From Klebsormidium nitens (Eukaryota; Plantae; Klebsormidiophyceae): a stretch of DNA of 64,000 nt. Below, one piece after another: positions 11,211 to 46,194 of this stretch. The DNA lies in NCBI GenBank assembly GCA_000708835.1, contig DF237119.1, positions 98,364-162,363 of the forward strand, given 5' to 3'. The translations under genes were made by a program, and so were the position numbers. Positions within the stretch are counted from its first letter, which is position 1; each line of letters begins with the position of its first letter. Below the pieces are notes generated by a model that was given only the letters and a program-made list of their open reading frames with translations, ran no database searches and had not been told where the DNA came from.

Positions 11211-13573
11211 CTAGCCTCCCAAGGCTCTGGTGTCACGTGGTTCCGGAACCACCACGGTGGGTACCGGGCAGTGCTGGACCAGGTGGGAGCTCACGCTGCC
11301 CAGTCGGAAGCGGTTACTGCGCAACCGGGGAGGAGATTACCGTTAACCGACCAACCGGGGAGGAGATTACCGTGAACCGACCTCCCTCAACGGGTGACAA
11401 ATGGGTGGGCCAGAAAGAAGTAGTCTCAAAGTAGGCAAGAGCCTTGTGTCTGAACGAGCCAATAATCATCCGCAAGCGCAAAGAAAGCAAGAGAGATGTC
11501 AAATTGGACAAGAGTCAAGGGCTCCGCGCTCCTCTACTCTCGACCTAGGTTCCGTGCAGAGTTGATTATGGAGTTTGCTGGTCCAAATACCGTCGTGAAT
11601 GTGCCGAGGGATAGAACTTTGATTGCTACCCCGAGGCGCAAAATACAGGACCAGACTTTGTATAACCTTCTGTAAACAGCGCTTCCTTCCCGACGCTGTT
11701 TTGAGGTAGAAGGGGAACAAGGAAGACAGGCATCTTAAACCAAGTCGCCCTAAGCTTTTGGAAAGTACCCGTCCGAAGTCTGCAAGGTTCCTGATGAGCG
11801 GGTCGTCGAAGCTGACACATCATGTCGGAGACCTTTCTAAAAATCTGTTATTGTGCCCCTTACTTGTGGGGGGGTGTCGAGCTGTCGGCCGCCCCCCGGG
11901 CGCCCAGCACGACCATGTCAACGGGGTGCTCGCTGACGTACTTGCTGACCTGCTCCCGGGGATCCCCCACCACCACCACCAACTCGGTGCGAACCTGCGG
12001 CCAACATATCACGAGTCCGTGAACCCGGGAACTTGCGTTACCCTGGCAGTCGGTCCAGACTGCAAACCAGATTCTAGAAATCTAAAGCTTGTTATCTGCA
12101 GTGCGTCCATCATAGGACGTACTGGTTGGAGATCCTGAGGTTGGAGCCTCCTTCCGAAGATATTCCTCCCTCTCGTGTCACCCGTCGAGCAGTCCCAGTG
12201 GGGACTTCGTTCCATGCTTTCAACCCCATCCATTTACTTCACAGCAGGCTTGCTTCAGGCCCCGAAAAATAGACCACGGACGGAACGCGTGCTGATCGGT
12301 TGTCTCACGAACCACTTTTGGAAGCATGGTTTTCTCGCAGCGTCTCACCCCGGTGCTTGCAGCGCGCTCTTGAAAAACTTTGAGGCTCTCGCGCGCCGCG
12401 GCTTCGGACTGTCGGACGACCGCGGCCCGCTCCTCGGTGGTCATGTTTAGGATGACCGGGTGGTTAAAAACTGGACAAAGCAGATTAAAAGAGTCTGGGT
12501 TTACAGCTGGTTAGTGGACTTAAACCGGGTGTGGAAAATCCATTTCGTGGCTGCACGAGAAGAACCCGTGTCTCTGAGACAGAAGATGAGTAGGGAGAAA
12601 ATGGATTACTTTCGAGAGGGACGCTGCACAGGTCTTATGAAAATATATGGTCATCGATTTCTAAAGAAAGGGGAAAGGAAGTGCGAGGTTCAGGTCAGCC
12701 TCGAGAGATGTTGAATGACGTAAGCGCCGGGCAAGGCTTTGAGCCTGATAAACGCTTTGAAGAGGACTGCAACAGGCTCATTTGGCTGCACTTATAGAGG
12801 TTTGTACACTGCAGCCGAGCTTCTGAGTTGGTCATGCGCAGGGGCAGTCTCGAAAACCAGAGCTTCAAAGCTCGTCAAGTTCCAGAATGCCTAATCAGAC
12901 TTCCCCTATAATCGCTATTTATAGCATGTTTCTAGCAGGACTCTGGACGGATGACTAGGGTCTGTGGACGGCAGAGAAAGCTCTGAAGTGCGAGCGAAGG
13001 GGATCGAAGATGGAAATCTTAGTCTCGTGTTTCTTCTTGAGAGGCTTTCTTCGTTTTTCCATACTGATATTCGTACTGAAGGTGTCGAAAGAATCGCATT
13101 CATTGCCAGTACCACCTTGCAATACTGGAGACTCTCAGCTACTCTTCTCTTTTCAAAATACAGAAGCAACGATTAGAATCTTAAAACGTCGGAGAACCTG
13201 CAACAGCAGATAGCCAGGACAAACTCTCCTGCCTCCTCTGAGGGTTTGACGTTACAGCTGTCATCCGCGGGTCACGATTGGTCCAGTTACGCATCGAAAG
13301 TTTCCTACATTGCAGAGTCAGGGATGTCCTTTTTGACCTCCAATCTCGTTTTAAGGGGCCTGGAGTCTCACTGTTCAAGGGCTTGAGGGCGTGGAACAGG
13401 ATGACGCGATCCTCTGGGCCGCAGATGATTTTGTGCAGGGCAAAATGGAATGCCCGGTGGGAGTGCTCCGAGCCATCGATTGCGCACAGCACGGTGCGCG
13501 CTCCATGCGCGCCCTCGCGGCGCGGCCGCGCAGCGCTCGCCGAAGAAGCTCCACCAAACGTCGCCTCTGCCAT
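11211..13573 (-). CDS. Universal stress protein (UspA-like) paralog A
   Basis: Exons 13573-13372, 12470-12349, 11994-11864 and 11316-11211, intron phases 1/0/2. Motifs VLCAIDGSEHS, VVGDPREQVSKYVSEHPVDMVVLGARG and LGSVSSHLVQHCPVPTVVVP. Confidence 0.92.
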
Positions 13574-16435
13574 CGTGCTCCCTACCTGGCTTCGCTCCGC
13601 AAGGACAGAGATCCTGAAAGCCTTTCTCTCCTCAGAAATCCAGAGTTCAAAACGCTAAGAATCAAAAATGCATCAGGAAGGGATTTCGTTTTTCGTTCTC
13701 AGAAACTCTGCTTTTCAGCGGTCCTCTCCATTGATGATCCAGAAGCGGAGCCTCCAACAATGCTGCTCGAGCAAGGAGGAGTAAGCATTTTCATGCTGTT
13801 GTCCCTGCTTCATGATTCAAAGCTCACATTTAGTCAAACACAGGAAGACGAGGCTGCGCTCTCTTTGACCAAATCAGCGGCTCGAAGTCTTCGAAAGAGC
13901 CTGCATATGCCTCTTTCTGCCTGACCCTAATTGCCATGCAAAGCCCTCAGTGACGCGCTCTAATAAAGCTTCCAATCTTTTTTTCTTGCATGCCAACCTG
14001 AGAGGTCTTTAACGGGGCAATCTCATGACGATCGCGATGACTGTACATGAAAATCCGCGAAGTTTCGCGGTGGCGGAAGCTCCTCAAAATGCAGTGGGTT
14101 CACGTCGTCCCCTCAGACAGGGTTAGCTACCGTTCCGGCCGTATGTCGTACTCGCTGGCAGACAAACAGAGGCTAAGATTGGATGTGGTTAAGGGCGGAC
14201 TCTGGCCGGAACCTCTTACTTACCTTGGACAGAAAGGGGCGCGGTGGACCCCTGTTGACGCTTATATTCAGACGGTCCAAGATCTGGTGCAGGTGTCGAC
14301 GATCCGGATCAGATTGAGGTTAGGCATTCGTGAGCATCGGGGTGACGAATCAGCGCATCAAGGAGGAGACAAACACATGCCAGCTTGCGCATGACTCAGC
14401 TGTAGAGTTTCAAAAGCCCACAAGTTTGCGAGCGCTCTGCTCGAGCCCCTTACGTGCAGGCATACGATATATGGTCATGCTCGCGGAGGCTCGACCATCA
14501 GGACATGGCTTCCGAGTAAAGTTGTTGATCACGTATGCAGGCGTTGCAACATATGTACTTTTCTCAAGTCGCTTGAAAGTATGCTATCATAAGCATTTCT
14601 CACCGAATGACTCGGGCGCTAGGAAGTCGGCCGATTCATGGGCAGAAGCTCCTGCGGCAATGACTGCCGCGTCGGCCAAGTCCAGAGTGGAAGCAAATTT
14701 GGTAGTCGATGGTGGGCATGAAAGAGCCATCCGAGAGCTCACCAGTTTTGCATGTCACTTTGCAGATTAATCTTTCATTTACAACGCGTTCCAACCGGAT
14801 GGCCTACATTATCCACAATGATAAGGTCTACTGCGGTCGTTCCGACTCGCATATGCTAAGGTCCTCAAGTCTGATTATCATGATTTGACACGGCATGTGG
14901 GTGCGAGCCTCTGCCGCAATGCCACAATTAGTTCGAACCGAAGACCATGCCGTGTGATTGAAGCACCTCTCAAAACAAACGCTTCCCTAGCTCGCTTAGG
15001 AACGTTGCACCTCAAGAGAATCACACCATTTGAGTTCCCTGAAGTTGCACTAGAACACCAATTCTACTATCTCTGACTGGCCAAGCTTTCTGGCCGGCTT
15101 CCATCGCAGATGAGTATGCCAACCGCTTATGATAAATATGTTGCTTTTTCTTACAACATCCCAGCAATCCCCCCCTTTCCAATCTACTTGCCGTTTGTGT
15201 CGTAATTACTGCTGAAACCCTGCACGCGCGTATAAAGGAATGGGCTTAACGACTCCGACTTGGAGGATCAAGCAAGCTTGTTGGAGTACGGCCTCACGAG
15301 TTGCGGATTGTCGATCACCTGCCTCCAGATAAACGGCGTACAAATCTGGCTTTGCCTCAAAAAGTGAGCACGCATCTTCTGCAAGTCGCGTTGCCCAATA
15401 GCTGTCCGTTCGATCCAATCACTGTCCTAGAAGAAGTTAACTGAATAACTCGCGAGATGGAGAAAAAGAGCAGACTTCCTACAATCTCGTGCGGACCCAG
15501 ACAGCAAGAGTGGACGGAAAACGGATTAGGCAAGCGCAATGTGGGCCTCGGGTAAGCAATCGGGGAAACAGGCCTGCTCGAATACATGGCAACCACTCGG
15601 AGCGACAACTCTCGCCACCTAGAGCATGCCATAGCGTATTGCCTTTCGCCGGAAATCAGTGCATCCGGAATCCACAAGGACGGCGCCGGCATACAGTCCA
15701 CTATGAGTGAAATCTTCGAGAAGCAGATTGGCCGACCGGCTACGAATGCGACAGCAGAGAATCCACTCGGTGCACTAGACCCCAAGTACCTACGTGTTTG
15801 CTCAACTCTGTAGCAAATTTGGATTCCAAGATACTCGGTCGACACCGGAAGCAGAGGCTTGTCAACTTACTTCACTGGTTCAGATGGCATCTCCGCGTCC
15901 CAGTCCGGTGCCCAGCCGCCGCCCCTTGATGGTCTCGGTTACCGTCGTGTTCTGCTTCCCTCGTTCCGTCTCTTCCGTTTTGCGGCCCTCCGAGGGAACC
16001 GAGCATGCCTTGAGGGGAGTTTGAGGTTGTCTCGGTGTTGGGGCTACAAAAACGGACGAGGCTCTGCAACAGCCAACGTCTTCGCCCTGCTCTGCTTCTC
16101 CGCTGCTCAGCGCCCTCGGGAGGTTGAGCATGTCAGCCATTTCAGGTTTCCAACTTTGACTACGGTTGACAGGTGGAGAACATTCAAGGAGCGCTGATGG
16201 CGTACTATACTCGGAGCTGGTCGGTATGACTTCTTCCCCAAGACGAGAGCGACCGCGCTAGAATGACTTCCAGAGAGGTTATATGCTTGCTGACTGTCCA
16301 AGGGCCCGCGAACTACGCAACCCTGACCTCGGGATAAGGGCTTTCAGCAGCCTGATGTCCTTAGGCGACATCCGCTCAGATGCAAGGTGCCCCGCAAACT
16401 ATCTAGTTGGCTTCAATTGGGGAACCGCCTTCTAC

Positions 16436-19975: not shown

Positions 19976-22351
19976 TCATGCGTACATGGGCGCCGTTCCC
20001 GCCTGGGGCACCACGGTCACCGGCACCGGACTGTTTGCCACCAAGTGGCTGCCGACGCTGCCGAGGAAGAGACTGCAACACAGGAAGGAATCTTCCTACT
20101 CCCATCATACAGTCTATTATTAGTAGTTTGGGGTAGAGTCAAGGGACGTCGACTGCCTGCTGACAGGTGACGAGATAATCGATTCGTTCAATATCCACCG
20201 ACTATTGTTCAAATAGCAATTTCGATAAGATGTCGCCTTTGTCAATTGGGCCCAGAATCACGTTTGGATAGTCTGCAGCCAAGCTTGATCCGCCCTGCAA
20301 AGCTGCTCCTTTCAACTACCAGCGTGCGGAGGAACTTGAAGGTCGAAGAGACCTAAAATGTATCTCGGATTTGAATGGGATTTCAGTTCTATCGAGCACG
20401 ATCATGTTTTTGCAACATCTTGCGGATTCGACGGCTTGCCTTCGGCAAGATGCTTTGATTCTTGACAGGAGCTCCAATCTGCTTGAACCCTGGCCAGGAA
20501 AAGTGTTCTCGAGAAGATCTCTAACTTCAAAGCTGCGGATAAGCAAAGACTGGATTGATCCACGGTAAGACAAGCACCGCAGCAAAAACCCAGTTACACA
20601 GCTGGGAGTAAACAAACCTGAGTTCGAAAGTGGATCGAGGAGGCTTTACCGCGCCACGGCGCTGAGGCCCCGGTTCCCGACCACCAGCATGTCCACCGGG
20701 TGCATCGCCACGTACTCCTGGATCGCGTCTGGGGGATCCCCCTCAATGATGGTCTAGTTACACGGAACCTGGTCGGGAGAGTCACACCGCGCAGTTAGAC
20801 GACCGGTTAGGCAACTGGTTGAAAACATGCAGATCGGCGCCACGTTGATTTGCGAGGGTCCGTTGTGAGAATGCTACGAAGAGTTTGAGAGAAGGGAACC
20901 GCAAAAGGAGTCTTTTGCTGGGGCCAGCCTCCAAACGAATGCAAAAGATTCGTTGCTTCTCCTTCACGACCCTATATTGTCATACGTTGATTCTACCTCA
21001 AAGCGCAAAGTTGAATGAAGTCTAAGCTCGAGGCCCAGATGAATTGAAGAAACGCGGGACGCCTTCTCGGCATGGCCCTGGGAGTGAGCATCCAACTTCC
21101 GAAGATCTGAGACTGTGAGCGCACCACATTCTAACTGCATAGAGAGGGGCTTCCAGTCTTCGTTCAAAACTGTCTGATCAGACCACCACAGAACTGGTAA
21201 ATTGGAAGACTCAATCCTTACTTTATCAAAAAGCAGCTTTCCCAAGTCTTCTTCCAGAAGGAGCGTTACAAGTGAGGAACAAAACTCATCAAAACGAGAC
21301 GCTATTCAGGACTCAGACGTTCATAAAAAACAGACGAGGCTCACCCCGGCAAGTTCGGACAGCTGCTGCAGCTCGTGTCGCGCTTCTTTGCGTCGCGCCT
21401 CGTCCTCTTCTTGAAGGATCCGCCGCTCGTGGTCGCTGTACACGGCCTCCTCGGCTGCGAAGGCGGCTGAAAAGATTCTTTCGCGTGAGCGAATCGTTTT
21501 GAGGGAGCTCAGTCGACCTTCCAGAGTTGCTCTCTTGAATCGGCAAAGACTTCCTCTGAACGGCTTGTAGAGTTGAGTCATAGTGGCGATTGGCCGTAGC
21601 TGAGGACATGATTGTGATTTGGGCCTTACGGCCAATTGACCGTAGTTCAGAGTTCTCAATTCAGTCGCGAGCCGATTTGAGCATTTCCAATGTGGTCCTA
21701 GACTGCTGAGTCGCAAAGCAATAGGTTTCTGTGATCAAACTGGTGATCAAATAAGGTGTCTTGGACCGAAAGTATACCATTGTCATTCTGAGAAAGAAGG
21801 GCCAACTGATCAAAGTTTTAGCATCAAGCTAGACACTATCATGTACCCAAATGATAATGAAGATCCAGATCTCATACCGGTGCCTGTTGTTGATTTGAAA
21901 TTCAAGTGTGTCGCACCTGCATCAGTCCCCAGCCCTGCCAACATCCTACATGAGCTTCTAAAGCATCGACCTGCTTCCTGCTACATTTATCGATATTCAT
22001 CAAATTTACTGAGCCAACATCTCACATTTTGCTAACCCCCGGTGCAAGTTTTTGCCATTCTGCTTCCAGAAAATCAGAACTGAAATCTGCTCGAAAGATT
22101 GTGTCCAACTCACGGTTCATGGGCTCAAAGGCCCGCACCAGAGTGACCCTATCCCCACGCTCCGGGTTGACCAGCGTCTCTCTCACAAACTTGAACGCCG
22201 CAAAGGACCCCTCAGAACCGTCGATCCCGCACACGATGCGCCGTCCGCCCGCGCTCCTGGCCGGCCGAACTTCAGAGGGTTCAGAGGTTTCTGCCTGCTT
22301 CTCTTCGGCTTGCTGCGCGGCCGCAGAAGCGGCGGGAATCGTGTCCGCCAT
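19976..22351 (-). CDS. Universal stress protein paralog B; in-frame TAG in exon 3 (pseudogene, or rescued by a shifted acceptor)
   Basis: Exons 22351-22114, 21466-21345, 20768-20650 and 20072-19976. Motifs IVCGIDGSEGS, VPCN*TIIEGDPPDAIQEYVAMHPVDMLVVGNRG and LFLGSVGSHLVANSPVPVTVVP. The TAG is at 20756-20754. Confidence 0.8.
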
Positions 22352-23050: not shown

Positions 23051-25505
23051 ATGGAGCGCTCTTCGGCTGCAGCTTCTGCAGCAACTGAAACAGAGCCCGC
23101 GCAATCTCAAAAAGAGGAACCCCAAACCTCTGGCGAAAGGGAGGAGAGCGGAGGAGGGAGCGCGCGCGCGGCCGCGGACGGGCGGCGCATCCTGTGCGCG
23201 TACGACGGGTCGAAGGGCGCGCGCGCGGCGTTCGAGTTCGCCAGCGAAAGACTCGCCTGCCCGTCGGAGCGGAGTGACAGCATAGTCCTTTACGAAGCCG
23301 TGGAGTCCATCAGCCGTGAGCTCCGAGTTCACCTACAATCACGGACTGGAAATTGATTCTAGAAATTTATTCCAGCAATACAGAATCTTTATAAGCAGTC
23401 TTTGTCTTCCATTCTGTGCGGATTACGTTTTCTTCAGTGTTATGGCGATTGAGAGCGAGGATGGATTCGAAATCAGAATCTTTTGATGGGAAGAGGGCAC
23501 ATTGGGTTAAGACTTGGTCAATTTTCTGCTTGAATTCACAGCCTATGAACGTTTTCCGTCAGAGCAATGCTTGTGTTTTTGTCGGTCCCAAATCCGGATC
23601 AATCTGAATAGCGATTTGCTTGCCTCGAAATAGCAACGGCGGAGAAAGGGATCTTCTAGACGTTATAATCTCTGGTCGATGTCCTGCCTGCGCACAGTCT
23701 GCCCAAAAATGGTTTGAAGCACAGTTTGTTTATCAAATGCTCTACAAAGAAAGCTCCGATCGCTCAAATCTGCAAGCAAGACTTTAATCATATGGTTCTC
23801 CGTCCGCTCTTTTGAAAATTGCTTGCGCCTTAACCTTCCAACTTCGCTGAAATAGACGAATCCAGTGAATGTGAATCTGGCGTCATCGTCTGACCCGTCA
23901 GTGCGCGCGCAGCGGCCACTTCGTTCATGGCCACGGAGAGCATGATTACGAAGCCGGAGTCGCTCCAGCGAGAAGAGACGCGGCGCATCAACCAGTCCCT
24001 CCAGGGACTTCAGGAGCTAGCCATGTCAACTAAGGTACGGCCACTCGCAACTTCCTTGAACTTTCCATAACATTCTTGAGTGGATTCTCTGCCAAACAGC
24101 ACAAGAATACTGAAGAGAGTTGCCGTGAACGTCGAAGATTTCTGAAGCGACAGCTTACGTATCGACTGCGCGTGTCGGGAATTGGTATACGTTATTAGGT
24201 GCCCATTTGTGTTGCTATTTCTGGACCAAATTACGAAGCTTTCACGTTTTCCGTACGATCTGAAGGCTTCAGGAATTCGCCTCTAGGGAGAGTGCTGAAT
24301 GGCTCTTCAAACCATTGCGCCCATATATAATACCGTTTTTATTTCTTTTTAATGTTATTTAGCCATTGGATGTCTCCGTGGCGGTTGGAAGCGGTGCTGG
24401 AAACTCTCACAAGTTTCCTTTCCTTTCTGATAGCTCAAACCTGAATTGACGCCTTTACGAAGAATCTATGTCCGCCATTTTCGCCGCTCAAAAGGTGCAA
24501 ATTACCGGAGCAGGTTATAAGCGTCTTGGACACTATTTTGCGAAATGGAAAAAGTCGAGACCTCCGTTTAGTAAGCAGCATTTGAGACCTTTCAATCTGG
24601 AGTTCTGTTCCTCTCGACCGGCAGAGGCTCTCTTCTTTAAGGGCAAAGGGCTTTGCGTTTTGACCTGGCAGCTCTCTTTCTGAAGCTTCGGTCGCTTTGA
24701 GCGCGCGCGCGACTAGCGGCGGTGTGGATGAACCTGACGTTATTCCCGGTTCTTGCTCCCAGGTCCCGTGTGAGCCGGTGGTAATGATGGGCGATGCCCG
24801 GGAGGCGATTCCCGAGTACATTGCCAAGCACCCGGTGGACCTCGTCGTGGTGGGCAGTCGGGGAATGAGCGCCATCAAGCGGTGAGCTGAATCTCCTGTA
24901 TACCCGAGCCTACATAGTTGCGAATCTGTGCCCTTTGAAAAGTGCACACTTTTGTCGGAATCGTTAAGTTGTGGCCTACCATACTCCAGAACGTGAAAGA
25001 ACGGAAAATACGGCAGCATATGGCACCAAAACTCAGCATTGATCAGAAGCCAATCCAGAGATGGATCCGTGACAACGAGCAACCTTGTGTCGCCTCATGC
25101 GAGGTAGGCCCGTGTGTTCTTCAAACCTTAAATGCTCCCAGATTTACGATAAGTCGTGCGAGAGAAAGTCTGTGAGCAACAACAAGGACAGCAAGTCAAT
25201 CCGTCCCTCTACTTCGATGAGTCAGAAAGTCCCCAAGAAACTGCTTATCCCCTTCTGGTTCATCTCCGCAGGTCCCCTCAGCATCTGCATCAATCCTGGG
25301 CGGGATCATGATTTCGGGGGACTGCGACCCCATAATTTATACGAAGCCATCAGAACAGTTTATCTTGAACATGAGTTTCCCTGTAAATAGCAGCTTTACT
25401 TGCATCCGTTCCGTGCTCTGCAGATTCTTCTTGGGGAGCGTCAGCACATTCCTGGTGCAACACTGCACGGTTCCGGTCGTGGTCGTTCCGCCGCCCGCGA
25501 AATAA
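23051..25505 (+). CDS. Universal stress protein paralog C
   Basis: Exons 23051-23315, 23913-24034, 24763-24881 and 25424-25505. Motifs ILCAYDGSKGA, GDAREAIPEYIAKHPVDLVVVGSRGMSAIKRFFLGSVSTFLVQHCTVPVVVVP. Confidence 0.95.
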
Positions 25506-29992: not shown

Positions 29993-30290
29993 NNNNNNNN
30001 NNNNNNNNNNNNNNNNNNNNNNNNNNNNNNNNNNNNNNNNNNNNNNNNNNNNNNNNNNNNNNNNNNNNNNNNNNNNNNNNNNNNNNNNNNNNNNNNNNNN
30101 NNNNNNNNNNNNNNNNNNNNNNNNNNNNNNNNNNNNNNNNNNNNNNNNNNNNNNNNNNNNNNNNNNNNNNNNNNNNNNNNNNNNNNNNNNNNNNNNNNNN
30201 NNNNNNNNNNNNNNNNNNNNNNNNNNNNNNNNNNNNNNNNNNNNNNNNNNNNNNNNNNNNNNNNNNNNNNNNNNNNNNNNNNNNNNNNNN
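29993..30290. other. Assembly gap (298 N) between the divergent USP-D and USP-E starts
   Basis: Run of N in the sequence. Confidence 1.
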
Positions 30291-30847
30291 TGAATACCGG
30301 TATGTTGGTTTCTAAGGATGTTTTTACTATGCACCGGTATCGAACGGGCTACCCCGCTGGTTCCGCTGGCCCGCGTTCGACGGTACGAAATCTGAAGTAT
30401 TCGTGGCACGTGCTTGCGATTCCACAAAACCAGCCGGTTAGAAAAATTCTGGTTCGGCGGTACGAACAAACCAGGAGTGACCTGGAGTGACCTGGAGTCG
30501 AACCGTGAGCGTGACTCGGACGTACACGGGCCTCGCCGGCGCCCCGGGCCAGCTACCAAGCTCGAAACCAGCAGTGGGCCGTCACTACTACAAGATTACC
30601 ATTGACTGAAGGGCACAGCTGATTCGGCGCTTTATATTCAATTGAGCTCAACTCGAGTAATTCATGAAGTCTACGGGATCGACTGAGATCCACTAGGCGA
30701 CCATTGCCTGTCTCGTCTCACCCGCATATTGCACTCTCAACCTTCCGGCAATCAGCTTTACTAAGTTCATAGTCCTACCTTCCGCAAACAAGCAACAGTC
30801 AATATCTTTCCAAGCACACAGCTCAGCAAGCGCATTCAGCTGCCGCC

Positions 30848-33800
30848 ATGGCTGACTCTGAAACCACCCCGGCCAAGCAGGCAGAAATCGAAGCGGCGCC
30901 GTTTGACAAACCTCTCTTAAGCCCGGGCGGCGCCCGGCAGCTGCTGTGCGCCGTCGACGGCTCTGAGGGGTCCAAAGCGGCGTTCAGATTCGTCCTCGAG
31001 AAAATGACGCTCCCAGAGCGGGGGGACAGAATCATCCTGTTCCAGGCGTGCCGGCGGGTCGACCGAGAGCTCGTTGAGCCGGGAACCCACTCCTACCAGA
31101 CGAGAGACTTCTTTACAGGTGCGAGTTCCTCATTTACAAAGTTTACAAGAAAAAGTCTGTTTTGCCTTTGCTTTGTAAAACGTGCAATTGCGTTGCGATT
31201 CTCTGTGCTTAATTCCGATCCATCTGGGACCCGCGTTTGCCAGCGCCCAAAAAGTGCGATGGAACTAGACGGTTCTGCTTCCCGGAAGCTTCTCACCGGC
31301 CGGGCAAATCAGTCGAGTCATTGACACAAACATTTAGCGGGAAATTTGGTACATCCTTTTGCTGCCTTCTGCTGCCTTCTGCTGCTTATGTAAGTTGAAA
31401 ACCGTCACATCAGGAAAGAATATCGCATGTGGGTACTTGACAGAATTTTCAAGATTCTCTGATTCAAACAGGTGGGCGATAGCCAAGGGCTGAAATGAAA
31501 TTGACGGACGCCCTTTCCCTATCCTCATTTCTTTTCTATCTTCTCAATTGATGTCGAGCAAGGGTCGGCCAATTTGTCGCGTACTCTACGTCTGATCCAA
31601 AATTAAGAGCTCTGGTTCCAGTTTTATCTCCTTACTCAATTAATAGCCAGTAAAGATGTCGTTTGCTTTCGACTCTGGAATCGTGGGTCCAGCCTGCTTC
31701 ACTCAAAGCAAGCCTGACTCTTTCTGAAATTTCATGTCTCATAAAACCAACGGCACAGCAATCCTCTACCTGATGAAAGTTCCGGATCGCCTAACCTCAG
31801 CGCAAACCTGTTCAGCGCTACCATTCACTTTGGAATGGCCAGAAACACAATATCAAGTTCTTTGCTCGTCTTGCTCACCTCGATCTCGAAGCTCCTGACA
31901 CCTGCCACTCTCCCGCTTTTCTTGCACCCCTCCTCTCCTTTCTTCACAAACTTCGACGGCTGATGCACACTCGACTATTTCGCAACCAAATTTCCCACCC
32001 GTTCCTCAATCACTTCAACATCATTTGACTGAACATAAGAACCTTATTTCTCTGAAAAGGGTTTCGGTGATTACCATTCCAATCTTACGTTCCTGAGAAC
32101 ATTTCCGTCATCGTCAGAAATTCTTCTCGTCTGCAGCTGATCTCGGCTTCATTGACGATGGGCATCGCAAGTCCGCCCAGGCAGAGCGCGAGCGCCAGGC
32201 GCTAAAGCAACTGGGGGAGCTGGTGAAGCTCGCTGACGTGAGCACCCGGGTGCAAAGTTTCCAAACGCTGTCTTGCCACTGCTGTGCTGACGTGATCTCT
32301 TTGGGGTACGGGTCGTTGTTCCGATCGCGCCGAGGTTGTCATCTGCTGATCCTTGATTGGTTTTCCATTCTTGATTCCTGCTTTCATCTTATCGACAATG
32401 TCTTCAGCCGTGTGAGGATCCCAATCCGTCAGAAATCTGCATTTCAAGCCTGTGGTCAGCCCGCTCCAAAGCGGGTCGCAAGCAGCTTTGAAATCTGCAA
32501 ATGCGGGTACTTCGACGAGGGGGCGTTTTTGCGACTCTTGAGTTTGTGACAGAGCTGGATTCCTGAGCTTAATATCACGTCCAGTCACTCAACCGAGCAA
32601 CTGTCGACAAGTTTACGAGTTCTGCGCCGCGGCTGCGCTCTTCTTGGTATAAAGGCGGTTTGAAACTTTCGACGAAATCAACCGTAGAACCAGAGATTAT
32701 TTCCGCACTGGTACCTTTTCTGTGGCGAGTCAGGCTTTTTTGTCAGATTCAAAACTCTCCGCACTGGTACCTTTTCTGTGGCGAGTCAGGCTTTTTTGTC
32801 AGATTCAAAACTCGAAGCAGTTACGGAATATTGCTGGGATGCCTAGTTGAAGCTTCGGACTCGAAACATCGTTTACGAAACCCCTGCTTGAATCGTAGAC
32901 CCAAGCGAGGCCACAAAGTCTAGTCAACCTTGTTCGCTCAGGATTTGTCGGCTTCCGTTTTGCGAAACTCCTGCTCTTTATGCTAGTACAACGTTTCCCG
33001 TCACCTTTCTCACTTCGACCACAATGCCCGCGACAGGCATCAGCGTGCGCAGACCCCAGCCTCACTTTCAAAATCGGTTGCGCGCGCGCACACGGCGGCG
33101 GTGCGCGCATTTTCGTGTATGGTGCATAGAGCCCGCCTCTCTTCTGCTCACCCTCAATTGCAATCGGGTATTGAATGACAAGGATGGTAAGAGTGAAATG
33201 GTCGCCTTAGCCAAGAGCATTTTGCCGCAGGTTCCCTGCGAGACGGTGGTGGTTACGGGCGACCCGCGGGACGAGATCCCGCGGTACGTCGCCAAGCACC
33301 CGGTGGACATCGTGGTGGTGGGCAGCCGCGGCCTGGGCACCGTGAAAAGGTACGTGGGCGATCAACATGAAACATTATTCTCACATTTTCTGATTCCGAC
33401 TGGAAGGCCCGGAAGCTCTTACAGAATGTATGGTTGAATCTGGGCTCTCCAATGCGGATTCACAACGTCGACGGTAGCCTAAGAAGTCAAAGAGTGCGTA
33501 AGTTTCGTGAGGGTAAACGAAGATCGTTTGCACCATCGAAGGATTGGTGACGTGAAATACTTCGACCAGCGCTTCGGGCACCGCTTCTAATCTTTTGCTG
33601 TCATTCAATCGCACCCCTTTCTTCGCTGTGCAAAATTGAAAAACGAAACTTTGACTTGCATTAGATTCTCAATCTTGAAGATCCTCCCTTCTATTTGGAA
33701 AACTCAATGTTACGTTCCGCAACTGTCAGCGCATGTTCGGTCTGGTCTGCGTACCAAATTCGGACACCAAGCAGGAACTCTTGTCGACACTTGCTGGCAG

Positions 33801-34070
33801 TCGGGAGTCTATCTAAAATTCGTCAAATCCTCAGAAGTCGGGAACGGCATCTTGACCAGCCTGACATGTGTCACAAGTGTTAGGGTCGTTGCGAAATATC
33901 CTAGCATCTTCCTTCTGCTCCGTGGATCCGGCAGTTATTCCAAGGCAAAAGTCTTTGGTTAATTTGCTCGCAGGTTGTTCCTGGGCAGTGTAAGCTGCGA
34001 CTTGGTTCGCCACTTGAGCGTTCCGGTCATCGTGGTGCCGCCGCCGTCAGCGGCGAAAGCGGTGAACTAG
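30848..34070 (+). CDS. Universal stress protein paralog E
   Basis: Exons 30848-31118 (donor shifted, see findings), 32137-32237, 33231-33349 and 33974-34070. Motifs LLCAVDGSEGS, GDPRDEIPRYVAKHPVDIVVVGSRGLGTVKRLFLGSVSCDLVRHLSVPVIVVP. Confidence 0.92.
32702..32813 (+). repeat. Perfect 56-bp tandem duplication in USP-E intron 2
   Basis: tccgcactggtaccttttctgtggcgagtcaggcttttttgtcagattcaaaactc occurs at 32702-32757 and 32758-32813. Confidence 0.95.
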
Positions 34071-35283: not shown

Positions 35284-37724
35284 CTACATGAAGACGGATC
35301 CAACAAGGGGCCCGCTTGGGGGATCCCCCCGCATCCTATCGTGGCTGCTTTCGTCCCGGGCCTCCCCCCGGTCACTGGCCTTCTCCTTGCGCTCCTTGGG
35401 ACAGGTTCCCCCGACAACGACGACAGGTACCGGGGAGTGGCTGACCAGGTAATTGCTCACACTGCCCAGCACCATACTGTAAAAACACAACGTAAATGAG
35501 GTTTGAGGGTTTAGAAAACGTGGCTCGGAATGGAGAAACAGAATCGATACTTCCCCAATGAACTGAGACGTGTCGATTGCATCATGTGGGGGGCCTGTGA
35601 GAAGTTTCTCTACAGTAGTTGCCACGTGGAAAGAGCTTTTCAAGGTGAGGACCATTCTGGGAGAGTAGACAAACGCTGAAAGATCTAGAGCGAAGTTGCG
35701 GACTGCGAGTGACTCAGGACCTCACCTGAGAATCGTCTCGAACGAATGGTGCAGATCGTAAGACAGACATCCGTGGCAAAAAAAGGGAATCCGCCTCGGC
35801 CTCCCCGCAAAACAATATGTTTCCTAAGCAGTCCAATCTTCCATTTGAAGACATCTCAACACCAACTGGTACAGGATCCACTTCGAGCGAGGTTTTATGT
35901 TCGTGTCTTCGGTAACGGAGAGCCAAGTTTGAAAGATCAAGGATCTCGAGAACTATCCACATTCTTCACGAACATGTATGAACCTCGAATCGACTTTGGA
36001 AACGAAGTGTAACCCGGGCCAGAAAGAGCAAGAAAGCCCACCTTTTGAACATCCCCCGGCCGCGCCTACCGACCACTACCAGGTCCACAGGGTGCTTCTC
36101 GACGTAGTCGGGGATGAGCACCCGGGGATCGCCCACCAGGACCACCGCCTCCGTCTCGACCTGCCATTAAAAGGGGCATTTGATTACGCGTGATCACCAG
36201 ACGGCTCAGTTTAGCGGCGGGTCTTTTCCGCCAAAATCAAGTGGAGACCGCTAGCGCCAATTGCCGAGTCTCGAGCCGGCGGACTGCGCAGCGACGGAAA
36301 GTTCGCAATTGCCGTGAAACAGTCGCCGCTCAATGACGTAGCTCTGACGTAGGTGGAACTGCCTGTTTCAAGACCCGCCGGGGATTGTAGATTCGGGGCG
36401 GAAAGTATTTGGAATCTGATCAGCGGGAGTAACTGTTCTGGGGCTGAACCCAATCTGGAAAAGGGATATGAAAATCGGGCAACGGCAGAAGAACCAAGGT
36501 GGTTCTGAACTTTTGAGAAGGCTAAGTCCATAAAATTGATGCATTTCTCAGTCTGAGAAGCTTCCCAACAAAGGTCAATCTAAGCAATCCGCCTGCTGAT
36601 TTGGATTCTGTGCCTCGAAGAAGCCTACGAACCAAGCCACGCGTTAGAATATGAGTTCAGAACGACCCTTGCAACAAATTTGTATCCAATCTGGAAAGAA
36701 GTTTTCGTACCGGAAGTTTGCACTTGAGATTCTCGACGTTGGAGAGGCACTCTTGCTTGAGCAGGTCCTTCACCACGGTCATCCCATCCTCATCGAGGCC
36801 TGCAAAATCTGCGGTGGCAGCGAGAAAGAGGAATTGACAAAGCACACAATCAAAAGCCGCGAACGAAACCGGGACATCCCAAAAGTTGGCACCCTGCTCG
36901 GCGGCTCAGTTATCTCTTGGGGCTCTCTTTTAACCCTCATGGGCTCTGTAATCCTGCCCCTAGAGGCCCCCCACCTGAAACGGATCAATATGTACCAAGT
37001 ACGACGTAGCAAAACTCTCCCCAAGATGGATCTTTTCGCAGTATAAACAGATTATCGGCCACAAGGCAGCCGAGGGAGGATACATGCAGCCGTGAATTTA
37101 GCTTGAACAAGCCTCCGTGCTGTCAAATTGATTTGGGCCGGAGCCAATGCCTACTAAAATAATGAAGTGAAGTGTCTATGCACAGAGACAATATGTATGA
37201 ATTTGACATTCCTAGGAACCAAATGGTTCTAAGGTGACGTAGAGATCAAGTCATCCTCTGCATGGATTGCAGATCCTCCACAATCGCCCACTTAAAGAAA
37301 GTCGGTCCATTTCATGTATCTCAATGGACTCGCACCCAGAAAATTGCAGATTTCAGCTCAGTGAGGGACAACACAAGCATGGAGTTGAAGACTCATGCCG
37401 CGCTTTTGCGTCATAATCAGGAATGAAATTGAAAGGAGGCGAGTTGTCTACTCACAAACGCGCAAGCGTCGCATGCTTGTTTCCTGTTCCACATTGGGAG
37501 CCCACCTGAGACGTCCTTGTATACAACTCACCCCGAGTGTCTTGTATCGCCTGAAAGAGTACAATCCTGTCGCCCTTCTCCGGGTCCACCAGCTTGTCTA
37601 CCGCAAACTGGAGCGCGCGCGCGGCCGCGTCCGAGTTGTCGAACGCGCACAGGACGCGCTTGCCGTCCGTGCTGCCTGCGCGCCGCGCACCTGCTTCGTT
37701 GCATGATTTGTCCTTGGAAGCCAT
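35284..37724 (-). CDS. Universal stress protein paralog F
   Basis: Exons 37724-37532, 36808-36711, 36160-36042 and 35476-35284. Motifs VLCAFDNSDAA, GDPRVLIPDYVEKHPVDLVVVGRRGRGMFKSMVLGSVSNYLVSHSPVPVVVV. Confidence 0.94.
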
Positions 37725-38706: not shown

Positions 38707-41416
38707 ATGGCGTCCGCCCCCGTGAAGACGGAATGTCCGTCGGAACCGCCTCTGCCCCGGAAGCCGTCCGAAACTGGCCGGGGCAAGCTCATCCTGTGCG
38801 CGCTGGACAATTCGGACGGGTCCGCAGCGGCGCTGCAGTTCGTGCTGGACAGGCTGGTCAAGCCGGAAGATGGCGACAAATTAATCCTGTTCCACGCGGC
38901 CAAGGACATCGACCTGAGTGAGCCACGTGGCACTCGTTGATTGGAAGAGCATTTGGACTGTGCTGTAAACGTGGTTGGAGGGCGAACTTGGTCTGGTTCT
39001 GGAGACTCGTTGGTTCCAGGGAAGCGTTCCCTCTGAGGTCATAGACGATTTTTGTCCGCATTCGCAGACATTGCGTGTCCTCTTGAAGCTTTCTGGGTTG
39101 CTTGGGGGCGTATTCCTAGTTTCGTGTGAAATGGTGGTCTACTTGGATTGCGTGCACGACAGACTCTTCGAGGATGTACCAGTCAGCTGTTCTTTGGAGA
39201 CATCAGCTTTAGGAAGTAGGCATCAGTTTTGGTGGTAGTAAGCTTGTTTATTCTCGGTTACAAAACACAGCTCGCATCAGTGGCAGGAAGGGGGATCCTG
39301 CCACTTTTGCTTCTCAGAGCTTCTGACCCAGTTCAGGTCCTTATACATGAATCCAGGCCCTAGCGAGTTGTTAGTTTTGAGGCGGAGGTTGTGAAGCACG
39401 TACGCCTCTGCTGGTTGCTCGATATCGGGAGCTCACTCTTTTAATATGTATCTAGAAGCATCATGTGTCCGCATTTCCAAAGATGGTCAAATTGTCAGAT
39501 CTTATTGTGTTATCGCTCAATAGCTGATTGTTCGTAGCAAGGGGGAATCCAGAAACTTTGTTGTGACAAAGATCTTAAAGACCCTTCCGGATCCGGCCGC
39601 GGCCCCGCCCCATTGCAGTTGCGTCTCGCAGATCCGCACCAAGGCCTAGGCATCGAGCTTTCCGTCAATTTTACCATTTTGCTGAATTCTGAGCTTGTTT
39701 CCTGCAGTCTGCACCAACGCGGAGCTCATGTTTGTACCCGACAGTGACATCGACGTGATGCAAGATCGCATCAGGCAAAAGTGCGTTGACGCTCTGGAGA
39801 TGCTAAAGCCTGAAATCCAGGTGAGCGAGTCGTTTAGTGTCAAAGCTGGCCGTTTCCTGGTTGCATGATCAGAGATACCGCGCAGCACTGCCGAGGGCTG
39901 ACCCGAATGCGACGATGCACATTTCCTCTCCGCTCTAGGCCTTCTCGGGTCCGCTTCTGTGAAGTGGTCCTACTTCTGGGCCGCTTGGGATTGGCAGCCA
40001 TCATTTTGTACTTTTTTGATTGCCTGGGACTGTGCACGCTGAGCTGATCGTTCTTTACATAAACTGACCAAGCTTCTGGCGTGGGCAGTCAGGGAAACTT
40101 AAAGCATCTTTATCAGTTGCAAAACCCAGATCGAGGCCGGAGATGCAGAATTTTCGTCTTAATGGGAAGGGCATTTGAATCATCGCCTTCGACCGCCAAA
40201 CGGCCCTGACAGCGTCTTCTACCGTAGAAAGAAAGCTCGCAACCCCGTCCTGCGTCGAACAGGAGGCGCCCCCATCAAACTCGCTAAAGACTGCGCTTTC
40301 TAGACAGGTTTGATCATTCGTATCAAGCCTAATCCAAATTTTCCGAATCTGCACAGGTGGAGACGGAGGTGGTCGTGGAGGTGGGGGATCCCCGGCAGCT
40401 GATCCCCGAACACGTGAAGCAGCACCACGTGGACATGGTGGTGGTCGGAACACGTGGCCGGGGGCCATTCAAGAGGTGGGCTTCTTGTTCGCACAGGAGA
40501 TGTTGGCAGCTAACCAGGCGAGCTACCAGAGTTGATTCTTAGATTGATTCTACAAATACCCGGGACTTAAACCTTGTTCCGAGGCTGGTTCCCGCCCAGA
40601 TCTGGTTATCGGACGTATAACCACTTACTAACCAAACCAGAACCGATTCAGAACCATCCTTGGTTAAGGGCCAAAATTTCCTGTGTCGGAGCCGTTTCTC
40701 GTCCCCCCCCCCTCCCCGATTCTCTGTCCAGCTCGCTTTTCCGTTTCCGAGCTTTTCTTCTTCCCTTTGACGCGGGCGGTCGTTCTTGGGACGGGTAATC
40801 TAAACTGTGGACTTCTTTGTCTCGCGATTCTTGATCTGCCACAAAAAATGGTGGAAAGTCTCCAGCCACCTTGGCAACTTCCCCCTCGAGCGACTCTCTT
40901 TCGCGAAGACATCGCCTACGCTCGATTTGTCCACCCTTCTTTTCGTATCCCTCCGTTCTTCCGATGCCCCGTGCTTGAACAATTCAGACGCTCCTCGGGA
41001 TCGATTCAAGCAGCGACGAATCTTAAGGCCTTGTATCACGAAGTAAGGACTCGTTTCTGGACATCCTCTTTCGCACTTTTCCAAGCAGCGTCCTTCCATA
41101 CTTGTTCGAGTAAACACTCTTTTCAAAGGAAAACCCTCGCCTTCCTTACGGACTCAGCCAGAAGATTGTATCCGCCATCCGCCGTGTGCAAGTCCACTAA
41201 CCGAGCACGGTTAGCGGTGGGTTATTCCCTTCGAATCGACGCAAGTTTCTCCGCTTCTACTGCAGCCTCCTTTTGGGCAGCGTAAGCAGCCACCTGTCCA
41301 GGCACTGCCCGGTGCCGGTTCTTCTCGTCCCCACCCCCAAGTCGCTACCGCACGATGAGGCGCGCAAGAAACCCGCTTCTGAACCGGGAAGTTCGCCGGG
41401 GAAGGAGCAGGTTTAG
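38707..41416 (+). CDS. Universal stress protein paralog G
   Basis: Exons 38707-38917, 39708-39820, 40357-40475 and 41266-41416. Motifs ILCALDNSDGS, GDPRQLIPEHVKQHHVDMVVVGTRGRGPFKSLLLGSVSSHLSRHCPVPVLLVP. Confidence 0.94.
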
Positions 41417-43029: not shown

Positions 43030-43781
43030 TCAAAGAGATTCGAAAAAGCGGATGTCCGGACGCCACTGCATAGGTGTTTTGACACGATGCCATGCGAGCA
43101 TCATCGAGGTAGCGTGTAACTCTCTCGAGAGCTTGAAGAGCACCAGCCTCAAAGGGAGGCATGACTCTGCATGTTTCCACACCAGGTTCTTGTAACCTGC
43201 AGACTCAAGTACGGCGACTCCCTGCTTAGCCCGAGAAGCTTCTGACAAGGTTATTTGGGCAGGACGGACATCAAGGTGCCGCTAGCAAGCATCTGCAGAA
43301 TTTGGGCACTCTACTTTGTGCACTAGTAGATACGTAGTAAGTAAATGAGGAAAAGGGGGAAAGAAAAGGTCGTTGGGCTTTTTGATTGAAAATATACAGG
43401 AGGTAGGAGTTTCCATAGACGCACTTCTATCGGGTTCGTTTGTCACGGAGCAACCGAAGTATGTGATCTTGAAGCCCGTTCCGCAGAACATTTTTTCTTA
43501 GCACGTGACTACTCTAAAACGGAGATACTGCATCTCTTCTAACGTACTATACAAACTCGTCTTTCGACAATAGGTAAATCGTACAGAGTCCTATTGAAAT
43601 TTTAGAAGGGTCCAACGAGAGACCGCTCCTTGCTTATGTACTCCTTTCTTGCATACAAACCCGTTCAATACATTGCACAAAATCTCTCTTCCATCTGACA
43701 TAGGCCATACCGTCATCAACAGCTGTCTTTTTGAGCGCCGTCTGCACGCACATGCTCCTGATGACGTCAGCGCCAGCGCTT

Positions 43782-46194
43782 TCAAGAAGCGGTCGCGTCG
43801 CTTTCCTTCTTCAGAAGCGATGCGGCAAACCTGGGGTTTGGGACGACGAGCACCGGAACCGGGCAGTGGCTGACCAGGTAGCTACTCACACTGCCCAGGA
43901 ACAGACTGCAGAGAACGTCGGGAAAACAGTAACGAATCTGCTCCCAAGCATCGAAAACTTTTGCGGGTTGAGAGTTCTCTTGTGCGAGTCGTTTTAGGAC
44001 CGGCTCTTGATGTCTTGCTGCCTCGGCCAGGTTCATGTTGTTTATCCCCACGGTTAGCTTCTTGCGGGTAACTCACAGCTTTTCGCATTTTGCTTCTTGC
44101 TGAGGGGCTTTGCGAAGCAGGCAAGGATCCTATTAATTGACCTACGAGGATCCAGAACAGTCTTTCCAGACAGGATCTGGGAAAGCACATGCAGGCGCGA
44201 TAATCTAAGATAGGGCATCGAGAAAAGATGACAACTCAGACATCCGCCTTCAAGGTAAGTCGATGGAATATGCTCGAATCTTCCGGTACAAACCAGATGC
44301 TGCCTCGAAGCGAGGGAGAACGTGACAACAAGCGGTTTCCCAATCGGAGTTGCGAGGAGCTTCTGGGCTGTCTAACAGTAGCCTGTTGACAGCAACCGAA
44401 CTTTCTTTTTCCTTTTCAGGAGCCGCTTTGGACGCAAGCACTGCCCTAAAACGGGACAATTCGTCTCCTAGGACTTAGACACGAAGGGATTTCGGCCTAC
44501 TTTGCGAGCTTATTTTCGAACTCTTGCCGGATACCTTGGCAAAGTCTTGAACTAGTTTGTTCCGGGAGAGGGGTTTGATTGGATATGACTCTTTGCGTCC
44601 GCATACGAGGCCGAAGACATTCAAGAAACCCAGCATACAGAAAAGGTTTTCAGATGACGTGGCAGATTTTTACTTCTGCACGGAGGAGCCCACCTCTTGA
44701 ACTTGCCCCGCCCCCGTGTACCGACCACCACCATGTCAACCGGATGCTTGGTGACGTAGTCAGGGATCAGCTGCCGGGGATCCCCCGGGAGAACCACCAA
44801 CTCGGCGTCTACCTGTGCGAACGGAAGGAGAGTGCAAGTATCAGACACGGCCAATTTGAGTCGCGGCTCGATAGGCGAAAGAAACTTGTATTTGTCCTCC
44901 AGAACAGATGATGGGATTATTGGAGCTTTGGAGCTCCAGTTTGGTCTGGTAGAGGTGCAGTTCGGCGTCTGATTGTTAAAATCAGCTGTATGTAAGGGCG
45001 CTGATCCAAGCCCCTAATTCCGTGCTGGGGTGACCGAATGTAGATCTTGCAGGATAGGACGAGCGGACTTTACAAAACCGACCAGGCAACCCACACGAAA
45101 GAACGGCAGGCTGCTGAATTGATTTTGTTAGTACCAATTGTAATTGAACTTCATGCATATTTGTTGCCTAGCTATGTGCTTCTAGCTCGCTTCTGGCTCA
45201 AAAGGGGGAATTTTAGCTACACTCGCAGCAGAAAGTTTGTGCCGTCTTAAATCGACGGGGTACAAGATTAACGTTGTAATCGGTTCAATATGACCAGAGG
45301 GACTCCTGGGGTACATAAGTTGACTTTGGGGATAGGATTTCTGCAATCAGGGTGATATGAAAGTACCTGGAGACACCTCTCACCAGCTGGTTGCTGGAGA
45401 AGCTTTTAAGCATTTGAGCAGAGACTTCACTGCCTACCTTGAATTGTTCCTTGATCTTCTTCAGGTTGGACAAGCACAGCTCCACGAGGCGCTCTTGGGC
45501 GGCGGCAATCTGGTTGTCTGGGACGAACATGAACTCCACGTCATCATACACTGTAGAACCAAACAAGAATATAAGGCTTCGCCACAGACTCTATCCACAA
45601 CGCTTTGCTTAAAGGAAACTTCTCAAAGCAGACTTCTCAAAGCGGACTTCTCTTTGAGTGGACAGGGCCTGACAATGAGAACAAGCGTGTGTTCACAGGA
45701 TCGTCCTACGTTGTTCTTTGAGGTGTGACTATCATACGCTGAATACGACACACGTCGTCAAGTTGAACGAGCACAGAGTTCGTCACAGGTTCGTCAAAAT
45801 AAGTTGACTGCGTCGCAAGCGTCTCCTGAGATTTGATTATAACGGAGATGGCTTTGCTATACAAGCCTTTGACCGCAATGCCTTGCAAAATCTAGCTGAA
45901 CGTTTTGACTCAAAGTTGTGCAGGGCAGTGCAGCTGAATTCAAGCAAGACAATCTAGTAGCACCAATCCTGCTCAACTCAAATCTCAAATTGCTCAACTC
46001 GCAAGCTTACTGTCAATGACCCTTGCCGCCTGGAACAGGATGAGCTTGTCGCCATCCTCCGGTTTCACAAGCGCATCCAGCACGAACTGCAGCGCCAGCG
46101 CGGACGCGTCCGAATTGTCCAAAGCGCACAGCACGCGCTTTCCGAGGGTGGCCTTCGACCGCCGGTTGCTTGTGGCGATCTCTTTGGAAGCCAT
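43782..46194 (-). CDS. Universal stress protein paralog H
   Basis: Exons 46194-46011, 45550-45438, 44812-44694 and 43905-43782. Motifs VLCALDNSDAS, GDPRQLIPDYVTKHPVDMVVVGTRGRGKFKSLFLGSVSSYLVSHCPVPVLVVP. Confidence 0.94.

What the first reader, a model, noticed from the sequence alone, without database searches (positions are those of the whole stretch)
11211..46194. Eight-gene universal stress protein array
Seen: eight intact or near-intact UspA-type genes within 35 kb. All have four exons with intron phases 1/0/2, and exon 3 is 119 nt in seven of eight. Introns share no obvious similarity, so the expansion is old. Established: USPs with G-x2-G-x9-G-S bind ATP and act in abiotic stress. Inference: a lineage-specific, functionally diversified stress-response battery, plausibly tied to terrestrial stress tolerance in a streptophyte alga. 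I know of no description of a cluster like it, but cannot search.
Basis: partly seen in the sequence, partly recalled or inferred. Interest (0 to 1): 0.75.

Follow-up and report, generated by a model that had tools for sequence, protein, structure and literature searches.

The report
Eight-gene stress-protein array in Klebsormidium
The land-dwelling green alga Klebsormidium nitens carries eight old, diverged copies of a small ATP-binding 'universal stress protein' gene side by side in 35 kb. This is a real expansion specific to the genus, but all eight genes are already annotated, the gene family is well known, and I found no evidence for a stress role.

Summary
The window is Klebsormidium nitens scaffold DF237119.1, and 11211-46194 contains eight USP (PF00582) genes. 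All eight are already in GenBank: GAQ83962 and GAQ83964-83970.

- **Gene structure:** all eight have four core exons, GT..AG introns and phases 1/0/2.
- **Exon 3:** it is 119 nt in G3-G8 and 131 nt in G1. In G2 the 119-nt version carries an in-frame TAG, which the public model avoids with a 104-nt exon.
- **Assembly gap:** 29993-30290 lies in the G4|G5 head-to-head spacer and touches no coding exon.
- **Age:** copies are 34-56% identical, similar only in exons, with dS near or beyond saturation (0.95 or more).
- **Phylogeny:** the eight group with at least seven dispersed K. nitens paralogues and two K. subtile transcripts in one clade (support 96/94). That clade excludes the Closterium, angiosperm and other USPs that were sampled.
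- **New point:** the 1/0/2 architecture with a 119-nt exon 3 also occurs in Closterium, Ensete and Eleusine USPs. It is therefore ancestral to streptophytes, not a mark of this array.
- **Nucleotide motif:** seven copies keep G-x2-G-x9-G-S; G1 has x15.

"Lineage-specific and old" is supported. [quoted passage not shown] is untested. I found no paper describing the array. Interest is modest.

The parts
11211..15890 (-). G1, GAQ83962.1 (P0001, 200 aa). Core exons: 13573-13372, 12470-12349, 11994-11864 (131 nt), 11316-11211. The public model adds micro-exons 15890-15871 and 15219-15210. The nucleotide loop is G-x2-G-x15-G-S.
19976..22351 (-). G2, GAQ83964.1 (P0221, 182 aa). The canonical 119-nt exon 3 (20768-20650) has an in-frame TAG at 20756-20754. 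The public model uses acceptor 20753, giving a 104-nt exon. This may be a young pseudogene.
23051..25505 (+). G3, GAQ83965.1 (P0211, 195 aa). Intact, exon 3 is 119 nt. It sits head-to-head with G2 across a 699-bp spacer.
26576..29162 (-). G4, GAQ83966.1 (P0128, 173 aa). Intact, exon 3 is 119 nt. Its AlphaFold model has the USP fold.
29993..30290 (.). Assembly gap (298 N) inside the 1685-bp G4|G5 head-to-head spacer (29163-30847). It lies outside every coding exon.
30848..34070 (+). G5, presumably GAQ83967.1 (195 aa; only length and span were matched). The ancestral exon-1 donor is lost: the sequence reads GAC C|GAGAG at 31064-31069, where the other copies have C|GTGAG. The model instead uses a donor 54 nt downstream, at 31118. 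Exon 3 is 119 nt.
35284..37724 (-). G6, GAQ83968.1 (P0124, 200 aa). Intact, exon 3 is 119 nt, with a long C-terminal tail.
38707..41416 (+). G7, GAQ83969.1 (P0004, 197 aa). Intact, exon 3 is 119 nt. It sits head-to-head with G6 across a 982-bp spacer.
43782..46194 (-). G8, GAQ83970.1 = KFL_001700250 (P0002, 179 aa). Intact, exon 3 is 119 nt. Its closest paralogue is P0003 on scaffold DF237577.1, at 77% identity with identical exon lengths.

Best explanation
This is an old gene-family expansion specific to Klebsormidium, within the streptophyte single-domain, ATP-binding-class universal stress proteins (the MJ0577 / At3g01520 type).

**Shown**
- The array grew by repeated local duplications. 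Many were inverted, which gives the orientation - - + - + - + -.
- The deeper splits, such as the G8 lineage from G6 and G7, predate the divergence of K. nitens and K. subtile.
- Array members and copies on other scaffolds are interleaved in the tree.
- Coding exons have stayed under purifying selection while introns and spacers diverged beyond recognition.

**Inferred**
- Each product is a USP domain of about 150 residues behind a variable tail of 20-46 residues.
- It probably forms a homodimer and binds ATP or AMP through the conserved Asp-x-Ser of strand 1 and the G-x2-G-x9-G-S loop, which is encoded across the exon 3/4 junction.
- It probably acts as a nucleotide-dependent regulator or chaperone-like protein, as described for plant USPs.
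- G1 (six-residue loop insertion), G2 (nonsense codon or shifted acceptor) and G5 (shifted donor) are the derived copies.

A role in stress is inferred from the family name only.
For: - **Family and fold:** Pfam Usp hits exon by exon, and PF00582 on all eight public products. The best solved relative of G8 is Arabidopsis At3g01520, PDB 2GM3, E 1.6e-11. The AlphaFold model of G4 has pLDDT 83.5, and all its top Foldseek hits are USPs, many of them solved with a bound nucleotide.
- **Motifs:** x9 spacing in G2-G8, and the Asp-x-Ser of strand 1 in all eight.
- **One clade:** 96/94 support for all Klebsormidium copies, and 99/97 for the G6-G7-G8 subclade (a similar tree).
- **No closer relative elsewhere:** the best single-domain hits in a 1.84-billion-protein library are all from K. 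nitens. The first other named eukaryote is Closterium at 112 bits.
- **Age and constraint:** 34-56% amino-acid identity. DNA similarity is confined to exons. dS is 0.95 or more, and dN/dS is 0.16 for G8 against P0003.
- **Integrity:** all 24 splice sites are canonical.
- **Completeness:** there are no extra fragments or relic copies in the window.
Against: - There are no expression or binding data for any copy.
- G2 has a premature stop in the ancestral exon 3.
- G1's nucleotide loop departs from the canonical spacing.
- Outgroup sampling is thin: three angiosperms, one Closterium, one cnidarian and a few environmental or prokaryotic domains. "Lineage-specific" therefore rests on ranked search scores plus a small tree.
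- dN/dS values are unreliable because dS is saturated.
- The length of the gap is only an estimate. Sequence hidden in the G4|G5 spacer cannot be excluded.
Confidence: 0.8

Rival explanations
1. The array is a co-regulated stress island. The three head-to-head pairs (G2|G3, G4|G5, G6|G7) share bidirectional promoters and are induced together by desiccation, cold or light. This would give the alga a dosage or timing advantage on land, which is the first reader's 'battery'.
For: G2-G8 alternate perfectly in orientation, with short head-to-head spacers of 699, 1685 and 982 bp. The chance of perfect alternation for seven genes is 1/64. USPs are stress-induced in many plants, by the family literature (PMC10003552).
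Against: - The shared spacers have no DNA similarity to each other.
- ABRE, DRE, HSE and STRE motifs are not enriched over the window background.
- None of the array's inferred gene ids appears in the held text of the K. nitens high-light differential-expression supplement.
- No expression data were available.
Confidence: 0.2
2. The array is partly decaying. G2, and perhaps G1 and G5, are non-functional or on the way to becoming pseudogenes, so the working set is smaller than eight.
For: - G2 has an in-frame TAG in the ancestral exon 3. The public model escapes it only through an acceptor 15 nt downstream of a stronger one.
- G5 has lost the ancestral donor (GT to GA) and needs a weaker donor, gtgcga.
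- G1 has six extra residues in the nucleotide-binding loop.
Against: - All three keep open frames downstream, canonical splice sites and the conserved motifs.
- Their branch lengths are not clearly longer than their neighbours'.
- The shifted splice sites keep the reading phase.
- G1's 10-nt micro-exon suggests a model built from transcripts, because the genome paper mapped assembled transcripts before Augustus prediction (PMC4052687). That link is my inference.
Confidence: 0.35
3. The repeat structure is an assembly artefact, for example duplicated haplotigs or a mis-join at the N gap, rather than eight distinct loci.
For: There is a 298-N gap inside the array.
Against: - Copies are only 34-56% identical in protein and unalignable in their introns, so they cannot be allelic or collapsed duplicates.
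- The gap lies in a spacer, and both flanking genes are complete.
Confidence: 0.02

Closest known systems
Arabidopsis thaliana At3g01520 USP (PDB 2GM3, AMP-bound) and related land-plant single-domain USPs
   Same: It is the best solved-structure sequence match of G8 and has the same fold. The land-plant and Closterium USPs sampled here share the same four-exon gene structure, with phases 1/0/2 and a 119-nt exon 3. The G-x2-G-x9-G-S motif is shared too.
   Different: Identity is only about 27-30%. The Klebsormidium copies form their own clade, apart from the plant sequences sampled. Function is unknown in the alga.
MJ0577-type (UspFG-class) ATP-binding USPs of archaea and bacteria (PDB 1MJH, 3S3T, 3HGM)
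   Same: The fold and nucleotide-binding motifs match. They are among the top Foldseek matches to the G4 model.
   Different: They are prokaryotic, intron-less and about 18-22% identical. Many of the best-scoring prokaryotic relatives are tandem two-domain proteins of about 294 aa, whereas these are single-domain.
Tandem USP duplicates in land-plant genomes, for example four tandem pairs among 108 potato StUSPs (PMC10816615)
   Same: Both are local duplications of USP genes. Eleusine and Exaiptasia USPs fetched here also have an adjacent USP neighbour.
   Different: Described plant cases are pairs, and segmental duplication dominates there. Here seven genes are contiguous and an eighth is one gene away, with alternating orientation and deep divergence.
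Second K. nitens USP locus on DF236976.1: catalase followed by two USPs (GAQ79264.1 and GAQ79263.1)
   Same: It belongs to the same Klebsormidium clade. P0127 is sister to array gene G5 and has the same exon structure, 262/110/119/88.
   Different: It has only two copies, both on the same strand, next to a catalase gene. The second model (P0303) ends before the C-terminal part of the domain: it matches profile positions 13-141 only and has three coding exons.

Membership tests
Universal stress protein family (Pfam PF00582) | Significant match to the Usp profile | tested here: met
   Exon-3 pieces of all eight score 24.4-40.2 bits against a cut-off of 24. Exon 1 of G1 scores 28.1 bits. PF00582 is precomputed on all eight public products.
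Universal stress protein family (Pfam PF00582) | Alpha/beta USP fold (parallel sheet flanked by helices) | tested here: met
   The AlphaFold model of G4 has pLDDT 83.5 and pTM 0.77. The top 30 or more Foldseek PDB hits are all USPs, with E down to 1.3e-10. Only G4 was modelled.
ATP-binding USP class (MJ0577 / UspFG type) | G-x2-G-x9-G-[ST] phosphate-binding motif | tested here: met
   The spacing is exact in G2-G8. G1 has G-x2-G-x15-G-S, so this feature is not met for G1. The motif spans the exon 3/4 junction.
ATP-binding USP class (MJ0577 / UspFG type) | Conserved Asp-x-Ser at the end of strand 1 | tested here: met
   All eight carry C-[AG]-x-D-[GN]-S.
ATP-binding USP class (MJ0577 / UspFG type) | Actual binding of ATP or AMP | not testable with these tools
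   This needs recombinant protein and a binding assay or co-crystal.
Streptophyte single-domain USP gene lineage | Shared intron positions and phases with land-plant and zygnematophyte USPs | tested here: met
   Exon lengths are 196/92/119/79 in Ensete P0205, 313/104/119/259 in Closterium P0326 and 253/107/119/94 in Eleusine P0192, all with phases 1/0/2. In the aligned Ensete and Closterium genes, introns 2 and 3 fall at the same alignment columns as in G3-G8.
Tandemly arrayed gene cluster from local duplication | Paralogues adjacent on one chromosome segment | tested here: met
   G2-G8 are contiguous with spacers of 0.7-2.4 kb. G1 is separated from G2 by one unrelated gene.
Tandemly arrayed gene cluster from local duplication | Members closer to each other than to homologues in other lineages | tested here: met
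   The Klebsormidium clade has 96/94 support. However, at least seven dispersed K. nitens copies nest among the array members, so the array alone is not a clade.
Stress-induced gene battery | Induction of the copies by abiotic stress | tested here: inconclusive
   No array id appears in the held text of the high-light supplement or in two other papers' supplements. Gene ids were inferred from serial accession numbers. No RNA data can be searched here.

The most novel reading that the evidence does not exclude
The alternating head-to-head array is a co-regulated module specific to Klebsormidium. Bidirectional promoters would switch on pairs of diverged ATP-binding USPs during desiccation or cold, and the expansion (at least 15 genes, 8 of them here) would have contributed to the aeroterrestrial lifestyle of this lineage, independently of the USP expansions of land plants.
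Probability: 0.15. Interest if true: 0.5.

Novelty: new member of a known kind. Interest (0 to 1): 0.3.

Why it matters
Klebsormidium is a standard model for how green algae coped with life on land. A genus-specific expansion of a stress-associated family, with more than half of the copies found here in one 35-kb array, gives a compact target for expression profiling and deletion.

The more general result concerns gene structure. The USP architecture of four exons, phases 1/0/2 and a 119-nt exon 3 is shared by Klebsormidium, Closterium, a banana relative and a grass. It therefore dates back at least to the common ancestor of these streptophytes and cannot be used as evidence for recent common origin.

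The family, its fold and tandem duplication of USP genes are all well known, and all eight genes are already annotated.

Tried and rejected
- **Motif scan on single ORFs:** a search for G-x2-G-x9-G-[ST] in single ORFs found nothing relevant, because the motif spans the exon 3/4 junction.
- **Brute-force exon search:** an exhaustive four-exon search timed out and was replaced by a stepwise search.
- **Pair-unit model:** I tested whether a head-to-head pair was the duplicated unit. It is rejected because G6, G7 and G8 are each other's nearest array relatives, in a clade with 99/97 support.
- **Stress cis-elements:** ABRE, G-box, DRE, HSE and STRE are not enriched in the shared spacers. The sigma-70 and terminator scan of the G4|G5 spacer does not apply to a eukaryote.
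- **Literature:** searches on Klebsormidium with USP terms, and on the scaffold id, gave nothing relevant. The supplements of three K. nitens stress papers gave no array ids.
- **Exaiptasia USP:** its exon structure could not be recovered by my exact-match splicer.
- **Extra copies:** I found no further USP fragments or relics in the window.
- **Joined models:** Exons were searched by reference, and whole proteins only as ids returned by the tools. G5's joined product was therefore never searched or confirmed by identity.
Full report
**Source.** Exon 1 of the first copy matches a 200-aa Klebsormidium nitens protein at 99% identity. Contig look-ups place the window on GCA_000708835.1 scaffold DF237119.1. 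Window position equals record position minus 98363, and the window ends at the scaffold end.

**Observation.**
- An all-against-all comparison of stop-to-stop ORFs found three exon families, each with eight members. Pfam assigns the exon-1 and exon-3 pieces to Usp, PF00582.
- I located splice sites stepwise. The result is eight four-exon models with 24 GT..AG introns and phases 1/0/2.
- The joined models were built only inside scripts. They equal the public proteins for G2, G3, G4, G6, G7 and G8, and form the C-terminal 186 residues of G1's. G5 matches in length (195 aa) and CDS span only.
- Accessions are GAQ83962.1 (G1) and GAQ83964.1-GAQ83970.1 (G2-G8, with G5's inferred from the series). 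G8 is KFL_001700250.
- The finding's limits are exact: 11211 is the last base of G1's stop codon and 46194 is the A of G8's ATG.

- Exon 3 is 119 nt in G3-G8 and 131 nt in G1.
- In G2 the ancestral acceptor at 20768 gives a 119-nt exon with an in-frame TAG at 20756-20754, where G3 and G5 have Glu. The public model uses the AG of that TAG as acceptor, giving a 104-nt exon that removes five codons in frame.
- G5 has lost the ancestral exon-1 donor. It reads C|GAGAG where the others have C|GTGAG, and the model uses a weaker donor 54 nt downstream in the same phase.
- G1's public model adds two micro-exons of 20 and 10 nt upstream. The genome paper mapped assembled transcripts with SPALN before Augustus prediction (PMC4052687), so I infer that this micro-exon reflects transcript evidence.

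**The gap.** The 298 N at 29993-30290 lie in the 1685-bp spacer between the divergent start codons of G4 (29162) and G5 (30848). No annotated coding exon touches the gap, and no USP-like fragment abuts it. Frame continuity is therefore not an issue. True spacer length and continuity cannot be tested here.

**Age and constraint.**
- Proteins are 34-56% identical.
- A sensitive self-comparison of 10-47.5 kb finds similarity only between exons, at 70-86% (most 72-82%), and none in introns or spacers between copies.
- Nei-Gojobori dS is 0.95 or more for every pair, which is at or near saturation. The least diverged pair, G8 and the dispersed copy P0003, has dN 0.15 and dS 0.95.
- These results confirm that the duplications are old and that coding sequence has been conserved.

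**Family and fold.**
- G8's best solved relative is Arabidopsis At3g01520, PDB 2GM3, at E 1.6e-11.
- An AlphaFold model of G4 (pLDDT 83.5) matches only USP structures at the top of the Foldseek list. These include 3S3T, 2GM3, 3HGM and 1MJH.
- All eight keep the Asp-x-Ser of strand 1. G2-G8 keep G-x2-G-x9-G-S across the exon 3/4 junction, and G1 has x15.

**Is it lineage-specific?**
- Word-index searches and one full HMMER search of 1.84 billion representatives recover further K. nitens members on other scaffolds: P0003, P0123, P0125, P0127, P0210, P0220 and P0303.
- They also recover two K. subtile transcripts, P0121 and P0126.
- The best single-domain hit from another named eukaryote is Closterium, at 112 bits against 142-270 bits for full-length Klebsormidium members.
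- In maximum-likelihood trees all 17 Klebsormidium proteins plus one environmental sequence form a clade with 96/94 support. It excludes Closterium, three angiosperms, Exaiptasia and the prokaryote-type domains.
- Dispersed copies nest among array copies. P0127 groups with G5, and P0003 and P0123 group with G8. The array thus holds 8 of at least 15 family members and is not itself a clade.
- K. subtile orthologues sit next to G8 and P0127, so the deeper splits predate the divergence of the two species.
- G6, G7 and G8 form a subclade with 99/97 support. This rejects duplication of a head-to-head pair as the unit and favours successive local duplications, often inverted.

**The gene structure is ancestral.**
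- I mapped public proteins back onto their genomic loci. The exon lengths are 196/92/119/79 in Ensete, 313/104/119/259 in Closterium and 253/107/119/94 in Eleusine, all with phases 1/0/2. In the aligned Ensete and Closterium genes, introns 2 and 3 fall at the same alignment columns as in the array.
- Dispersed K. nitens copies share the structure too.

**Function.** Nothing here tests it.
- The shared spacers have no mutual similarity and no excess of common stress motifs.
- The held text of the high-light supplement lists only kfl00170_0020 and kfl00170_0160 from this scaffold. By serial numbering, _0160 is the non-USP 247-aa gene.
- No paper that I could search describes the array.
- Plant USP surveys report mostly segmental duplicates and a few tandem pairs (PMC10816615).

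**Verdict.** The feature is real, correctly delimited and already annotated. It is an old Klebsormidium-specific expansion of a well-known family, with three mildly derived copies. Its interest lies in offering an experimental target and in correcting the gene-structure argument.

Noticed in passing
window 8424-9437 (+) and 16439-17227 (-): Two paralogous genes flank G1 in inverted orientation. They are 56% identical over 185 aa, and the public products are 247 and 181 aa. Neither has a Pfam hit above cut-off; there are only weak Cys-rich Stc1 and ZZ-like matches. By serial numbering the first is kfl00170_0160, which rises from 7.6 to 22.3 in the high-light supplement of PMC9121098.
   Followed up: partly
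L004 (DF236976.1) 2183-14991: A catalase gene is followed on the same strand by two USP genes of the same Klebsormidium clade, P0127 and P0303. The P0303 model ends before the C-terminal part of the domain: it matches profile positions 13-141 only and has three coding exons. An earlier scan note describes this locus as USP + USP + catalase + LEA.
   Followed up: partly
window 32702-32813: A perfect 56-nt tandem duplication lies inside intron 2 of G5.
   Followed up: no
window 46573-47215: Seven RCCGAC (DRE-like) matches fall within about 640 bp of the G+C-rich spacer between G8 and the divergent SUMO-ligase gene. The window-wide count is below chance expectation, so this may be a composition effect.
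   Followed up: partly
window 42501-42543 and 43049-43091: A short inverted repeat (84% over 43 nt) lies in the long G7|G8 tail-to-tail spacer of 2365 bp, which holds no called gene.
   Followed up: no
L008 3855-4719 and L007 6540-7148: The Eleusine and Exaiptasia USPs fetched as outgroups each have a second USP gene immediately downstream. Tandem USP pairs are therefore common outside Klebsormidium.
   Followed up: no
P0122 (JGI metagenome contig, 1114 bp): An environmental protein 63% identical to G8 nests beside G6 inside the Klebsormidium clade. It presumably comes from a Klebsormidium-like alga in a metagenome.
   Followed up: no
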